A stretch of 63,091 nucleotides of DNA, filler included, from Reticulomyxa filosa (GCA_000512085.1; 15 parts of 15 records of this genome joined end to end with filler, not necessarily neighbours in it); one strand, 5' to 3'. Shown: positions 23,439 to 28,564, counted from the first letter of the whole stretch. A program made the numbers and translations. The notes: generated by a model from the letters alone, not told the origin.

Positions 23439-26400
23439 AACAGGTATCGTCGAGTTTATTGGTACTGTCGAATTTGACGAAGGAACATGGGTCGGCTTGA
23501 TCTTGGATGAAATATCCCCCAATGCGACCGATGGCATCATCAGCGGAAAGTTATACTTTCAAACCCAACCGCACAGAGCATTCTTCACAAAGCAAAAGCA
23601 TTTGACAGAGAATCTGGGTTCCATTCTCAACACGCCATTGATAATGCTGGGAAGAAACACCGCTCAAAATGACTTGGCGTTTAAAATCGGAGACCGAATT
23701 CAATTGGCGGAAGGTGGCACAGGCACTGTGAAATATATCGGCTCCGACGAGGATAGCAAAGAAATAGAACCGATCGTTGGAGTGGAATTGGACACGTGGG
23801 ATCCCAATGCCAATGATGGGATATTTAAAGGCAAGGAGTTGTTTCAAGTCAAAATGGGCAGAGGTCTGTTCACACGTCGCCAATCGATACTCCAGGTATT
23901 GCCAGACAAGCCCAACGATACGCGCCATTTGAAAGACATGCCAAAGATTGGAAACCGTGTGAAACTGCATTCGGGAGAAGAGGCTGTCGTGGACAGTATT
24001 GGCGACGATATCACTGTCACATTGCTGTTCTCGTCCACGCGAAGTGATATCCGACGGACGGTAAAGTTGACCGATTTGAGTGAAAACTTGGGCAAATTTT
24101 ATGACAAGCAATACACCGTCTTGCCAAACAAACACTTGGAATTGATCGTCGGTGATCATGTTCGTTTGATCCGTGGCAAAACAGGCAAAATCAAATATAT
24201 TGGCCGAGTGGGCAATGAAGGCGAAATGATCGGACTTGAAATGGATTCGTGGACTCCGAGTGGACACACTGGCAAAGGGTATTTCATTGCTCCCAATGGC
24301 CGTGGACACTTTGCAAAACGCTCCGATATCGTCGAAATCATTAAACCTCCGGAAAAATCGGAACAAGCAAAACTTCAAATCCAAAGACATCGACAAATGC
24401 TCAATTTGCAAAATAAAGTATACAAAATCGAACAATTGGAAAAAAAGCAGCGCTTGGGAATGGACTTAGACTCGGAACAAAACCAATTTGTTCAGCGCAA
24501 AACGCTGCTGCAAAGACAATTGAAAGACTTGACCGAGGCGTTCAATCAAAACTATCCTTTCGTCGAAATTGATGAAGTCGTCAAACGCGAGGCAAGTGCG
24601 GGATCGAATGGATATGGATCGCTTGTGATCCAAGAGTCATTGTCCGTAAACACCGGCGATCGAGTCGTCCTGGACAGTGGCGACATTGGCAAAGTGATAT
24701 TTATTGGGTCGGTGAGCTTTGACAATCGACAAATGCTTGGAATCCTCTTGGATGAGTGGTCTCCCAATGGACACGATGGAACAGTGGATGGCACGCAGTA
24801 CTTTGAAGCGCCCGAGGGAAGAGGCCTATTGGTACCCTTTGACTCCGTCGTGGGGTTGTATGATGAGTACGGAGAGGTGCAAAAGGCCGCACCCAAAAAA
24901 AAGATCAAAAAAAATGATCAAAAACGAGGATCCGTGGAATTGAAGCCAGTCATGGAAGAAGAAGACGATGACGACGATGAAGATTACAAAAATGAATCGG
25001 AAAGGCAATCGATAATAACAAAAATTTTTGAGGGAGATAAGACAGTGTATCCTGATTTGCCAAAAGTGGGCGAAAAAGTAAACGTTGGAGGTGTGTGTGT
25101 GGGAAGGAAAAAAAAAAAAAAAAAAGAACTTTCATATACGATTTTGTCGTATTGAATGATAGATATGCGGTGTTGTAATGTTTTTGTGTGTTTTGGCAAC
25201 AGGAAAATCGGGAGTGGTAAAATATGTCGGAAAAACAGAATTCAGCAAGGAAGAACCAATGATTGGAATTGAATTGGAAACGTGGAGTGCCAATGCCACG
25301 GATGGGTCGTTCATGGGGACGAAATACTTTGAGTCTGCTCCAGGCAAAGGATACTTTCTCCGTAAAGATTCGTATGCCTCTTTAAATGATATGATGAACA
25401 ATAGCAAAGCCAAGTCTATTCTGCAGCAAGGCTCTTTGGCTTTGGAAAACTTTGATTCCAAAGCCTTGGGAGTGTACTTTGAGGAAGATGACCACGTGGT
25501 GACCAGCGAGGGCCACAGTGGGAAAGTTGCGTTTATTGGAAAAGTCAAATTTAGCACAAAGGAAATGGTCGGCTTACTTTTGGACGAATGGGACCCCAAT
25601 GGACATAACGGAAGGGTGCGCGGTGAGAAATACTTTGACGCCTTGGACGGATTTGGCTGGTTTGTGCCCGTGGACTGTGTTATCGAAAAAATTACCGACG
25701 ACGAGGAATGGAAAAACAAAAGAGAAGAAACGCAACGCCAAAAATCGAAAAACAAATACCGTCCAAAGATTGAGATTGGACAACGTGTGCAAATCAAAGG
25801 AGGACTTCGTGGCTTGGTTCGTTTCTATGGAAAAACAGCCTTTGACGATAGCAAATGGGTTGGATTGGAATTGGATAACTGGCATTACAATGCACATGAC
25901 GGCACTGTCGATGGCAACAACTACTTTACTGCGAACAAAGGACGTGGATTCTTTGTTAGGCCAGAGAACATTTCTGTTGTGCTGAGAAGAGAAGACGAAA
26001 AAAAAGACGTGGAGTCATTGACAGTGATGCCAGAAATTGGAGATCGTGTGCGAACTGTTCGTGGCAAGACTGGGATTGTTCGTTTCATTGGACCTGTCAG
26101 CTTCTCCAGTGGAGTGCTCATTGGTCTTGAACTGGATCGCTGGAGTGCTAACGGCAATAACGGCTCTGTCGACGATTCCCCTTATTTCAGTTGTCCGTTG
26201 GGTCGTGGCTGCTTTACCTCTTTGTCTCATTTGATCGAAAACTTGGGATCCACTTTACCCACTCAGTCCGAATCAAATGAAAATGATTCCAAGACATCCA
26301 CCGAAAATTCAAAACAAGACTCATCATCATTACGACTCGGAGACAAGGTCCAATTACCTCAAGGAAAAGTGGGCACTGTTCGTTTTATTGGAACGACTGA

Positions 26401-28339
26401 AGCGACTGGAAATGATGAAATTATTGGCTTTGAGTTTGTTTTGTTTTGTTTTGACATTCAAACTTGTCTCAAACTATTCTTTTTATTAAATCGAACATGC
26501 TTTGTATATAACTGTTGGAAATACTGATCAGATTGGAGTCATGGGACGCCAATGCCACCGATGGCTCTCTTGGAGGAAAACGCTTATTTGAAGCGCAAAA
26601 TGGAAGAGGCTATTTTACTCGTCGAAAATCAATAGCCGATGTGGTAAGGCCGCAAATCAAAAAGGATGGCTATGCCAAATTAAAGGGGTTGCAAAGCATG
26701 GTCAACTTCAACGGTCGAGTGGTAAAGCTAATTGAATACGTGCCCGAAAAACAAAGATGGAAAGTGCGATTGATTGGAGGGAAAAAGAAAGATAAGAAAA
26801 GTTTGGGAGTGAAAGAAGAAAATTTGACACCAACATTGGACTGGGAAATACTTCCTGCTCTTGGCTCCAGCAGCACGCACTTGACGAGAGCGCCCATGAT
26901 TGGTGATCGTGTGCGCACCAAAAATGGAAAAACTGGAATTGTCCGATTTGTGGGAGAAGCAGAGTTTGCGAAAAACCAGATTACGATTGGGTTGGAATTG
27001 GATGAGTGGAGTCCATCAGCACACAATGGTACATTGGACAAAGAGTATTTCAAATGCAAAGAGGGACACGGTTACTTTACGAGTTTGGAAAATTTGATTG
27101 CCAATTTAGGGCAATTTGATGAAAACCAACCCAACGCTCCACCTTTGCAAAAATCTGAATTTAGAGTTGGTGACAAAGTCAGATTGGCCCGCGGAAAAAT
27201 TGGAGAAGTCAAATTCATTGGAGTCACCGATTTCAGCAAAGGTGAGGAAATTGTTGGACTGGAATTGTCCCAATGGACTCAAGGAGCACACGACGGAAAG
27301 GTGAGTGGTAAGGAATATTTCAAAACAAAGAAAGGCCGTGGTTATTTCACTCGCAAGGCATCCGTGGCAAGTATTGTGTTATCAGATGCGGTGCTCAATA
27401 GTGAGAAAAATGCAGACAATGATGATACTAACAACAACAACAATGATAAGAAAGGCGTCAGCAAAGCACGAATTCGTCGTGAAGCTAACAAAATGAAGAG
27501 CAAAATCCATCAGATATTGGTATTGGAAATGCGCGAAGCGAAAGGAGAAAAATTAACCCCTTATCAAATAGACGAAATCAAACAGAAAGCAAAATATTTG
27601 CAAAGACTAAACGATTTGGAAAATGGCAACATTGATCTTGAAGCGGAAGATAGGGAAAAAAAGGAACAAGACAAAAAGAAACGCAAGCATTTGTTAGAGA
27701 GAAAAGCCACAATGGATTTGACCGCAAAGAAATGGAAAGTCCCCGTTAAAGTGGATGATTTGGTGAAATTGGAAAATGGAGACACTGGCGTGGTGAAATG
27801 GATTGGCAAAGTAGCATTTCTTCCCGACGACATCATTGGGTTACTGATGGACCAAAGCAATCCTAATTACCACACCGGCGAATTAGAAGGCAAAGAATAT
27901 TTCAAAGCGCCAAATCATCGAGGATACTTTGCATTGGCCGAAGAAATCGAAGAAAACATGGGCACGACAAAGCGTTCTCGTCGTCGAAAATCTGTCAATT
28001 TGACCGAAGAGAATAAGAGCGAGAAAAATGTAAAGATTGGAGATGTTGTGCAGACAGCCGAAGGATCTGGGAAAGTTGTTTGGATGGGCACAGTGACTGC
28101 AGGAGACGAAGAGAAAACAAATGAAGAAATGCTTGGCGTGGAATTGGAATCCTTTAGTGCCAATGCCAATGACGGATCGGTTGAGGGAACAAAGTACTTT
28201 GATAGCAAACAAGGACGTGGTATGTTTGTACGTACGCAGTCGGTTCAACTCGATCTGAATTCCGATTTTGCAAAAAGTCAACTGGAAAATGCGGTAATGC
28301 CAGGAGATCGAGTCAGAACAGACAGAGGCTATACAGGAG
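23439..28339 (+). CDS. Giant multi-CAP-Gly protein (at least 13 domains plus one partial), truncated at both contig ends
   Basis: Repeated (I/V)GDRV..G.V.(F/Y)IG...GxELDxW....DG...G..YF....GxGxF. Three ORFs are joined in frame by GT-AG introns 25091-25202 (phase 1) and 26434-26531 (phase 2). Confidence 0.95.
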
Positions 28340-28564
28340 TTTTGAAACTATATTAACTGATTCTTTTTTTTTCACCAAAAAAAAAAAANNNNNNNNNNNN
28401 NNNNNNNNNNNNNNNNNNNNNNNNNNNNNNNNTTAATTAATTAANNNNNNNNNNNNNNNNNNNNNNNNNNNNNNNNNNNNNNNNNNNNAGAAAAAAAAAA
28501 AAAAAAAAAAAATCATCCAAGAGACAAAAAAACAAACAAACAAAACAAAAACGACGAAAATTAG

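What the first reader, a model, noticed from the sequence alone, without database searches (positions are those of the whole stretch)
23439..28339. Giant poly-CAP-Gly protein: at least 13 microtubule-binding modules in one chain
Seen: after splicing two introns, about 1,550 aa contain 13 CAP-Gly domains, one degenerate copy and the start of another. The gene runs off both contig ends. Known: familiar CAP-Gly proteins (CLIP-170, p150Glued, TBCB/TBCE, CYLD) carry 1-3 domains, and foraminifera have extremely dynamic reticulopodial microtubules, a divergent beta-tubulin and helical tubulin filaments. Inference: this may be a lineage-specific multivalent tubulin scaffold, cross-linker or storage factor.
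Basis: partly seen in the sequence, partly recalled or inferred. Interest (0 to 1): 0.85.

Follow-up and report, generated by a model that had tools for sequence, protein, structure and literature searches.

The report
Giant poly-CAP-Gly protein of a foraminiferan
This piece is part of one Reticulomyxa filosa gene whose protein strings together at least 13 copies of a variant CAP-Gly domain (normally a tubulin-tail binder found 1-3 times per protein). It belongs to a small, undescribed family of such giant arrays that, among named organisms, was seen only in foraminifera.

Summary
On the + strand, three open exon pieces (550, 409 and 602 codons, no stops) are separated by two short GT-AG introns. 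They encode 13 CAP-Gly domains, one degenerate half-copy and the first 13 residues of a 14th. The gene is cut at both contig ends.

The piece is the 4,950-bp Reticulomyxa filosa contig that carries GenBank RFI_03278 ("hypothetical protein, partial"). Its deposited model mis-splices both introns.

The array is old and under selection:
- Copies share a median 44% identity.
- There is no DNA-level tandem repeat.
- All 13 domains have one-to-one partners in a paralogue, RFI_31450, which has about 27 domains.
- dN/dS against the paralogues is about 0.1-0.2.
- An intron-less homologue from a Tara Oceans metagenome is collinear across both splice junctions.

In 1.84 billion representative proteins, only four have nine or more CAP-Gly stretches: three from R. 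filosa and that Tara homologue.

The fold is canonical (TM 0.92 to p150Glued), but the domain is a variant. The Lys of the GKNDG motif is missing in all copies, the loop has one extra residue with a conserved Trp, and 9 of the 13 domains are acidic or neutral. Tubulin binding is therefore plausible but unproven.

Verdict: a real new variant of a known kind. Function is inferred only.

The parts
23440..25090 (+). Exon 1 (open at the contig's 5' edge; 550 whole codons plus the first base of a split codon)
   Evidence: No stop codon. 59.6% identical and collinear with RFI_31450 aa 686-1245.
25091..25202 (+). Intron 1 (GT..AG, 112 nt, phase 1), splitting CAP-Gly 5
   Evidence: Removing it restores a full CAP-Gly domain. 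The intron-less Tara ORF P0029 aligns across the junction with no indel. The GenBank model reads into it.
25203..26433 (+). Exon 2
   Evidence: 409 whole codons, no stop. 66% identical to RFI_05929.
26434..26531 (+). Intron 2 (GT..AG, 98 nt, phase 2), splitting CAP-Gly 9
   Evidence: The two halves match profile positions 1-29 and 39-63. The intron sits at the same position in both paralogues. P0029 is continuous across the junction.
26532..28338 (+). Exon 3
   Evidence: 602 whole codons, no stop. Exact match to GenBank ETO33824.1. 59-62% identical to the paralogues.
28339..28388 (+). First 50 nt of intron 3 (GTTTTG donor), cut by the contig end
   Evidence: Both paralogues have an intron at this same point, L001 with the identical GTTTTGAAA donor start, and continue the domain after it.
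23440..23601 (+). CAP-Gly 1 (N-terminus cut by the contig edge)
   Evidence: Pfam 49.8 bits, profile positions 13-64.
23686..23889 (+). CAP-Gly 2
   Evidence: Pfam 50.9 bits.
23947..24090 (+). Degenerate CAP-Gly: the N-terminal half and the ENLG tail are kept; the motif loop and the YF are lost
   Evidence: No Pfam hit. hhalign 91.8% to the CAP-Gly profile, columns 1-37. Conserved at the same position in RFI_31450 and P0029.
24148..24327 (+). CAP-Gly 3 (short loop, basic)
   Evidence: Pfam 31.9 bits.
24340..24560 (+). K/E/Q-rich linker 1, coiled-coil-like by composition
   Evidence: No Pfam family. The helical or coiled-coil character is inferred by eye and was not tested.
24655..24849 (+). 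CAP-Gly 4 (acidic, pI 4.1)
   Evidence: Pfam 54.6 bits. Charge.
24955..24987 (+). Acidic run ending in Tyr (EEEDDDDDEDY) inside the linker
   Evidence: Read from the translation. Significance unknown.
25066..25372 (+). CAP-Gly 5, interrupted by intron 1 (25091-25202)
   Evidence: The C-terminal part scores Pfam 50.5 bits on profile positions 12-63. The N-terminal 9 residues lie at the end of exon 1.
25487..25681 (+). CAP-Gly 6
   Evidence: Pfam 50.0 bits.
25775..25972 (+). CAP-Gly 7
   Evidence: Pfam 71.9 bits. AlphaFold pLDDT 96.1. TM 0.92 and rmsd 1.1 A to p150Glued 2hqh.
26036..26230 (+). CAP-Gly 8
   Evidence: Pfam 63.5 bits.
26339..26634 (+). CAP-Gly 9, interrupted by intron 2 (26434-26531)
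   Evidence: Halves score 21.1 and 20.8 bits on complementary parts of the profile.
26650..26838 (+). Conserved, very basic (net +10) non-CAP-Gly module with an SH3-like small beta-barrel
   Evidence: No Pfam hit. 61% mean column identity across 6 homologues. AlphaFold pLDDT 75, five strands. Only generic KOW/Tudor-like matches, TM about 0.55. Unrelated to CAP-Gly by hhalign.
26899..27093 (+). CAP-Gly 10
   Evidence: Pfam 58.4 bits.
27166..27366 (+). CAP-Gly 11 (basic, net +6)
   Evidence: Pfam 57.6 bits.
27445..27730 (+). K/E/Q-rich linker 2, coiled-coil-like by composition
   Evidence: No Pfam family. Conserved in RFI_05929. The coiled-coil character was not tested.
27751..27945 (+). CAP-Gly 12 (lacks the Trp; acidic)
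   Evidence: Pfam 42.6 bits.
28036..28245 (+). CAP-Gly 13
   Evidence: Pfam 51.6 bits.
28300..28338 (+). First 13 residues of CAP-Gly 14
   Evidence: The GDRVRT..G.TG start is identical in type to the other copies. The paralogues complete this domain after the intron.

Best explanation
SHOWN. The piece is an internal fragment of one protein-coding gene of the foraminiferan Reticulomyxa filosa (GenBank RFI_03278 / ETO33824.1). It has three exons and two short introns, and a third intron is cut by the contig end. It encodes a beads-on-a-string protein of at least 1,563 aa. The protein contains 13 folded CAP-Gly domains, a degenerate half-copy, a conserved basic SH3-like barrel, two K/E/Q-rich linkers and the start of a 14th domain. 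It is one of at least three collinear paralogues in this genome: RFI_31450 with about 27 domains, and RFI_05929+05930 with about 16. The array is ancient and under purifying selection. The domains belong to a distinct 'W-type' CAP-Gly subtype, whose motif loop reads W-x-x-N-[AG]-[HNT]-[DNT]-G where canonical domains have GK(N/H)DG. Among proteins that carry a source name, this subtype was found only in foraminifera.

INFERRED. Each domain keeps the canonical CAP-Gly fold, and the remodelled loop that lines the ligand groove is among the best-conserved blocks of the domain. The protein therefore most likely works as a high-avidity, multivalent binder of short C-terminal tails. Alpha-tubulin, EB-like proteins or a foraminifer-specific tubulin are the likeliest targets. 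It would then scaffold, bundle or cross-link the very dynamic microtubule/tubulin system of the reticulopodia. The altered groove suggests a ligand specificity that differs from the classical EEY/F recognition.
For: Identity. Exon 3 is an exact substring of P0028 (ETO33824.1), whose contig length of 4,950 bp equals the length of the piece.

One gene:
- No stops in 1,561 whole codons.
- Both introns split CAP-Gly domains, and splicing rejoins them.
- The three pieces are collinear with RFI_31450 aa 686-2234 at 60-62% identity.
- They are also collinear with a single uninterrupted Tara ORF, P0029, at 39-42% identity, with no indel at either junction.

Selection and age:
- NG86 gives pN 0.20-0.25 against pS 0.64-0.75.
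- All 13 domains have a clear one-to-one partner in RFI_31450.
- Copies share a median 44% identity, and there is no DNA tandem repeat.

Fold. pLDDT 96; TM 0.91-0.92 to p150Glued CAP-Gly complexes. The profile scores E 1.4e-17 against p150Glued.

Conserved groove loop. The WSPNAHDG block is among the most conserved windows of the domain.

Rarity and lineage.

General role of the CAP-Gly groove in EEY/F and tubulin binding. PMC9062740 and 10.1101/130104.
Against: No experiment or RNA data bear on this: no RNA run was listed.

The Lys of GKNDG is Ala, Gly or Tyr in all 12 scored copies here, and in 0 of 87 domains of named foraminiferal proteins is it Lys or Arg. The K and N of this motif support EEY/F binding in CLIP-170.

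Trp57 of p150 is replaced mostly by Met, Ile or Leu.

Nine of the 13 domains have net charge of 0 or below (pI 4.1-6.4), which is unlike basic tubulin-binding CAP-Gly faces.

CAP-Gly domains can have non-tubulin ligands, as in CYLD (PDB 7owc/7owd, CAP-Gly3 bound to ubiquitin, listed).

The true N- and C-termini of the protein are unknown.
Confidence: 0.55

Rival explanations
1. The array is a multivalent scaffold for a non-tubulin ligand, such as other C-terminal aromatic motifs, proline-rich segments, ubiquitin, zinc-knuckle proteins or actin. Its link to microtubules would be indirect or absent.
For: The canonical Lys is missing in every copy. Most domains are acidic or neutral. CYLD CAP-Gly domains bind ubiquitin rather than tubulin (PDB 7owc/7owd titles). 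The CLIP-170 CAP-Gly region also binds F-actin (PMC9062740).
Against: Nearly all characterised CAP-Gly proteins act on tubulin or +TIP tails. Domain 7 is 45% identical to p150Glued with rmsd 1.1 A. The Y-F, the Gly scaffold and the Asn/His-Asp-Gly part of the motif are kept.
Confidence: 0.27
2. It is a membrane-microtubule tether. The CAP-Gly array would be anchored to an organelle or the plasma membrane by a C-terminal part that is missing from this contig.
For: The collinear Tara homologue P0029 ends in about 260 aa with three hydrophobic helix-like stretches, within one uninterrupted ORF in AT-rich DNA.
Against: The R. filosa paralogue on L006 instead continues into more CAP-Gly domains, then a GKHDG-type CAP-Gly and a Cys-rich zinc-finger-like segment. 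No hydrophobic segment was noticed in its gene models or in the downstream ORFs, but no formal scan of that downstream region was run. The P0029 tail has no Pfam match and could be a read-through of non-coding DNA.
Confidence: 0.1
3. It is an annotation or assembly artefact: several short genes, a collapsed repeat, or a decaying pseudogene array.
For: The R. filosa assembly is fragmentary. Deposited models in this family are visibly mis-spliced or split, as with RFI_05929/05930. No RNA evidence was obtainable.
Against: There are no stops in 1,561 codons. dN/dS is about 0.1-0.2. The copies are divergent, with no DNA repeat that could collapse. The order is collinear in two paralogues and in an independent intron-less environmental ORF. 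Multi-CAP-Gly proteins of the same subtype are present in the EukProt sets of Nonionella and Bolivina.
Confidence: 0.04

Closest known systems
R. filosa paralogues RFI_31450 (ETO05945.1, contig ASPP01027642.1) and RFI_05929+RFI_05930 (contig ASPP01005087.1)
   Same: They have the same domain order, copy for copy, at 59-66% identity. They share the SH3-like module and the linkers, and introns 2 and 3 lie at the same positions.
   Different: They are separate loci. RFI_31450 extends about 685 aa further upstream and more than 370 aa further downstream, with about 27 CAP-Gly hits on its contig, ending in a GKHDG-type CAP-Gly and a Cys-rich segment. All are unnamed hypothetical proteins.
CLIP-170 / CLIP-115 (CLIP1/CLIP2)
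   Same: They have CAP-Gly domains in tandem, separated by short linkers and combined with long K/E-rich helical regions. Fold match TM 0.87-0.90.
   Different: CLIPs have two domains with an intact GKNDG motif and basic faces. This protein has at least 13, with the Lys lost, one extra loop residue, a Trp, and mostly acidic or neutral domains. No zinc knuckles or ETF tail are seen in the fragment.
Dynactin p150Glued CAP-Gly
   Same: It is the best sequence and structure match: profile E 1.4e-17; 45% identity, TM 0.92, rmsd 1.1 A.
   Different: p150 has a single N-terminal domain followed by a basic patch and a coiled coil. Lys68 and Trp57 of p150 are not conserved here.
CYLD (three CAP-Gly domains)
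   Same: It is a multi-CAP-Gly protein whose domains depart from the GKNDG consensus and bind non-tubulin partners (PDB 7owc/7owd).
   Different: CYLD is a deubiquitinase with three domains. There is no catalytic domain here, and the sequence similarity is lower (27-28% identity).
Tubulin cofactors TBCB / TBCE
   Same: They are CAP-Gly proteins that handle alpha-tubulin. TBCE uses His in the motif (GKHDG), as most copies here do.
   Different: They have a single domain, the Lys is retained, and they carry ubiquitin-like or LRR partner domains that are absent here.

Membership tests
CAP-Gly domain (Pfam PF01302) | Sequence match above the curated gathering score (26.5 bits) | tested here: met
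   12 domains score 31.9-71.9 bits. The 13th is present as two complementary halves of 21.1 and 20.8 bits on either side of intron 2.
CAP-Gly domain (Pfam PF01302) | CAP-Gly fold | tested here: met
   Domain 7 has pLDDT 96.1. TM 0.91-0.92 and rmsd 1.1-1.2 A to p150Glued. The top 47 PDB matches are all CAP-Gly domains or CAP-Gly-containing chains (TBCE).
CAP-Gly domain (Pfam PF01302) | Conserved glycines and the Y-F pair | tested here: met
   G13, G19, G30, G43 and F51 are invariant. Y50, G58 and F60 are conserved in at least 90% of the 12 aligned copies.
Canonical tubulin/EB-binding CAP-Gly (CLIP-170, p150Glued type) | GK(N/H)DG motif with the Lys | tested here: not met
   The aligned position is Ala, Gly or Tyr in all copies. 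The loop is one residue longer and carries a Trp.
Canonical tubulin/EB-binding CAP-Gly (CLIP-170, p150Glued type) | Basic face complementary to acidic tails | tested here: inconclusive
   Whole-domain net charge is +2 to +6 in 4 domains and 0 to -7 in 9. Surface electrostatics were not computed.
Canonical tubulin/EB-binding CAP-Gly (CLIP-170, p150Glued type) | Binding of C-terminal EEY/F peptides or microtubules | not testable with these tools
This needs biochemistry.
CLIP-170 family | Two N-terminal CAP-Gly domains, a long coiled coil, C-terminal zinc knuckles and an ETF tail | tested here: not met
   At least 13 domains are spread along the whole fragment. No CLIP1 or zinc-knuckle Pfam hits were found. 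The termini are missing.
Foraminiferal W-type poly-CAP-Gly family (defined here) | W-x-x-N-[AG]-[HNT]-[DN]-G loop in most copies, six or more copies per chain, and collinearity with RFI_31450 | tested here: met
   All 16 proteins I looked up that carry a source name are foraminiferal.

The most novel reading that the evidence does not exclude
The W-type poly-CAP-Gly proteins could be a foraminifer- or Retaria-specific class of structural microtubule-associated protein. Their 13-27 evenly spaced, groove-remodelled domains would each grip a tubulin subunit tail. The protein would thereby template, stabilise or store tubulin in the helical-filament or paracrystal form, or zip reticulopodial microtubule bundles. 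In short, it would be a molecular ruler or scaffold behind the exceptionally fast assembly and disassembly of the foraminiferal cytoskeleton.
Probability: 0.15. Interest if true: 0.85.

Novelty: new variant of a known kind. Interest (0 to 1): 0.6.

Why it matters
CAP-Gly proteins are textbook regulators of microtubule ends and of tubulin folding, and they carry one to three domains.

A family with 13 to about 27 domains per chain would be a new architectural extreme. So far it is confined to foraminifera among named sources, and its ligand groove is systematically remodelled. Foraminifera have unusually fast microtubule turnover, helical tubulin filaments and a divergent beta-tubulin, none of which has a molecular explanation. 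This family gives concrete candidate proteins for biochemical testing.

The work also corrects public gene models. RFI_03278 is mis-spliced at both introns. RFI_05929 and RFI_05930 appear to be one gene. RFI_31450 reads through an intron.

Tried and rejected
- RNA evidence: the look-up of sequencing runs listed no RNA run, so read laying could not be used. Expression and splicing rest on homology only.
- The R. filosa genome paper (10.1016/j.cub.2013.11.027) is not held, so I could not check whether it mentions these genes.
- Full-text searches for CAP-Gly with Reticulomyxa or foraminifera gave 0 papers, and with Rhizaria gave 2 irrelevant ones. Phrases for multiple or tandem CAP-Gly domains gave nothing relevant. 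A search for R. filosa tubulin tyrosination gave nothing usable.
- Antisense ORFs (up to 294 aa) have no Pfam family and no CAP-Gly hit. There is no Rfam family on either strand. I read these ORFs as chance frames opposite a long gene.
- No DNA tandem repeat of the domain unit was found, so recent amplification is rejected.
- The SH3-like module gave only generic KOW/Tudor/PWWP-like matches and weak Atlas leads. It shows no relation to CAP-Gly, and its function is left open.
- An Atlas search with the 8-domain Tara protein P0006 gave only generic CAP-Gly clusters and no taxon.
- The C-terminal hydrophobic region of P0029 has no Pfam family.
All searches were exon by exon or domain by domain, by reference.
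Full report
WHAT IS THERE

The piece 23439-28388 carries one long + strand reading frame in three segments:
- 23440-25089: 550 codons
- 25205-26431: 409 codons
- 26533-28338: 602 codons

None has a stop codon. The segments are joined by two short canonical introns: 25091-25202 (GT..AG, 112 nt, phase 1) and 26434-26531 (GT..AG, 98 nt, phase 2). With the two split codons, the fragment encodes 1,563 residues.

A third intron begins at 28339 with a GTTTTG donor. The contig end cuts it 50 nt later. The 5' edge cuts the first domain.

The − strand shows only chance ORFs. They have no Pfam family, no CAP-Gly signal and no Rfam family.

DOMAIN COUNT

Pfam CAP_GLY (gathering score 26.5) matches each exon piece four times. 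Scanned domain by domain, 12 domains score 31.9-71.9 bits. The 13th lies across intron 2 as two complementary halves, on profile positions 1-29 (21.1 bits) and 39-63 (20.8 bits).

Between domains 2 and 3 lies a degenerate copy at 23947-24090. It keeps only the N-terminal half of the domain (hhalign 91.8%) and a C-terminal ENLG tail.

The last 13 residues of exon 3 are the start of a 14th domain.

IDENTITY

Exon 3 is an exact substring of GenBank ETO33824.1, [quoted passage not shown]. That record's contig is 4,950 bp, the length of this piece.

The deposited model differs from mine in four ways:
- It starts 51 residues later.
- It reads about 20 residues into intron 1 and skips the first 13 residues of exon 2.
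- It keeps three extra residues at intron 2.
- It terminates inside intron 3.

My junctions restore complete CAP-Gly domains. They are also matched, residue for residue and without an indel, by an independent intron-less ORF from a Tara Oceans metagenome scaffold (P0029, locus L002). The same intron positions recur in both R. filosa paralogues.

ONE GENE, OLD AND UNDER SELECTION

The three pieces are collinear with residues 686-2234 of R. filosa RFI_31450 at 60-62% identity. Exons 2-3 are collinear with RFI_05929 at 59-66% identity.

RFI_05929 and RFI_05930 are evidently one gene that was split at the homologue of my intron 3.

All 13 domains have a clear one-to-one positional partner in RFI_31450. 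Within the protein the copies are far more divergent: the domains are 33-47% identical to domain 7, with a median of 44% over all pairs. There is no DNA-level tandem repeat.

Nei-Gojobori counts against the paralogues give pN 0.20-0.25 and pS 0.64-0.75. That is a dN/dS of roughly 0.1-0.2, although dS is saturated.

The Tara ORF is collinear at 39-42% identity through all three pieces. The array therefore predates that divergence.

No RNA run was listed for this sequence. Expression is thus not shown directly. Multi-CAP-Gly proteins of the same subtype are present in the EukProt sets of Nonionella stella and Bolivina argentea. From my own knowledge, not from a tool, those sets are transcriptomes.

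HOW RARE IS IT

I searched a profile of the gene's own 12 copies against 1.84 billion representative proteins. It found 8,397 CAP-Gly proteins. By number of matched stretches:

| Protein | Length | Stretches | Source |
|---|---|---|---|
| RFI_31450 | 2,604 aa | 23 | R. filosa |
| P0029 | 1,694 aa | 14 | Tara metagenome |
| RFI_03278 (this protein) | 1,525 aa | 13 | R. filosa |
| RFI_05929 | 994 aa | 10 | R. filosa |
| all others | - | 8 or fewer | - |

Canonical domains score 40-66 bits with this profile. Any 10-copy protein of any type should therefore have ranked near the top.

A six-frame scan shows about 27 domains on the RFI_31450 contig and about 16 on the RFI_05929/30 contig.

One unrelated long array was hidden behind its cluster representative. 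P0171, from an unidentified eukaryote, has 14 copies of a 246-bp unit at 97% identity, with a basic RHDG motif. It is a recent amplification and quite unlike this gene.

A family of complete 6-8-domain proteins is common in Tara metatranscriptomes. Its taxon is unknown.

THE DOMAINS ARE A VARIANT

Domain 7 folds with pLDDT 96. It superposes on p150Glued CAP-Gly at TM 0.92 and rmsd 1.1 A with 45% identity.

The motif loop, however, is different. Where p150 has A-KGKNDG, these copies have W-S-P-N-[AG]-[HNT]-[DNT]-G:
- The Lys of GKNDG is absent in all copies.
- The loop is one residue longer.
- A Trp is conserved in 9 of the 12 aligned copies.
- p150's Trp57 is mostly Met, Ile or Leu.

Across 87 domains of named foraminiferal proteins, none has Lys or Arg at that position.

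In the 150 best hits the loop types separate cleanly into three groups: W-type, canonical GK(N/H)DG and GMH(D/N)G. All 16 proteins I looked up that carry a source name, all of them W-type, are foraminiferal.

The K and N of GKNDG support EEY/F binding and plus-end tracking in CLIP-170 (PMC9062740). Nine of the 13 domains are acidic or neutral. Even so, the remodelled loop is among the most conserved blocks of the domain, which argues that the groove is still a functional site.

OTHER MODULES

- A 63-residue, very basic (net +10) module at 26650-26838 is strongly conserved in six homologues. It is predicted to be a five-stranded SH3-like barrel with only generic KOW/Tudor-like structural neighbours. 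It shows no profile relation to CAP-Gly.
- Two K/E/Q-rich linkers look helical or coiled-coil-like by composition. This was not tested.
- The Tara homologue ends in about 260 residues with three hydrophobic stretches.
- The R. filosa paralogue instead ends in a GKHDG-type CAP-Gly followed by a Cys-rich segment.

INTERPRETATION

Shown: this is a real, selected, single giant poly-CAP-Gly gene. It is one of at least three collinear paralogues, and it belongs to a domain subtype so far named only from foraminifera.

Inferred: it binds short C-terminal tails multivalently, most likely those of tubulin or EB-type proteins. It would thereby scaffold, bundle or cross-link the reticulopodial microtubule system, possibly with a specificity shifted from classical EEY/F. 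I put about 0.55 on this reading. I put about 0.27 on a non-tubulin ligand, about 0.1 on a membrane tether, and under 0.05 on an artefact or pseudogene.

NOVELTY

The protein sequence has been public as a hypothetical protein. I found no paper describing CAP-Gly arrays in foraminifera in the searchable library. The genome paper itself could not be read.

I rate it a new variant of a known kind, of moderate-to-high interest. Its value depends on biochemical confirmation.

PROCEDURAL NOTE

All work was by reference to exon pieces or single domains.

Noticed in passing
L001 3130-3420 (R. filosa ASPP01005087.1): GenBank models RFI_05929 and RFI_05930 look like one gene. RFI_05929 ends 13 residues into a CAP-Gly domain at a GTTTTG donor. 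The rest of that domain follows after an AG at about 3248, inside the gap between the two models.
   Followed up: partly
L006 1-12090 (R. filosa ASPP01027642.1): About 27 CAP-Gly hits lie on the + strand, spanning RFI_31450 and the next gene model. The last is a canonical GKHDG-type CAP-Gly followed by a Cys-rich, zinc-finger-like segment. This is probably one gene of more than 3,500 codons. The deposited RFI_31450 model reads through the homologue of intron 2.
   Followed up: partly
L002 452-5536 (TARA_SAMEA6035044_METAG-scaffold_15857): An intron-less, apparently complete 1,694-aa homologue has 13-14 W-type CAP-Gly domains. Its C-terminal region of about 260 aa contains three hydrophobic helix-like stretches and has no Pfam family. 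It may be a membrane-anchored relative. The organism is unknown.
   Followed up: partly
L007 10795-14236 (ENA ERZ26695579, 170-kb contig): An unrelated protein (P0171, 1,430 aa) has 14 tandem copies of a 246-bp CAP-Gly unit at 97% identity, with an A-RHDG motif. This is a recent amplification in an unidentified eukaryote.
   Followed up: partly
L003-L005 (Tara Oceans metatranscriptome contigs; P0002, P0004-P0008, P0013-P0024): This is a family of complete 560-911-aa proteins made almost only of 6-8 CAP-Gly domains. The loop reads W-x-x-(K/R/N)-G-(H/N)-D-G, and the proteins end in GWGYFTKP..IAEV. Several are present in more than one Tara assembly. The taxon is unknown.
   Followed up: no
window 23610-23620, 24080-24095, 26240-26255, 27095-27110, 27950-27965: A recurring short tail motif, (L/I)-x-E-N-(L/M)-G, follows domains 1, 8, 10 and 12 and the degenerate copy. 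The other domains end in G-R-G-Y-F-T-R-(R/K). This suggests two alternating domain subtypes and growth of the array by duplication of multi-domain units.
   Followed up: no
window 24955-24987: An internal acidic run ends in Tyr (EEEDDDDDEDY) and resembles a tubulin-tail EEY motif. It is not at a C-terminus, and its significance is unknown.
   Followed up: no
window 25108-25125 and 28377-28388: A homopolymer A run lies inside intron 1, and another lies at the 3' contig end. The latter probably caused the assembly break.
   Followed up: no
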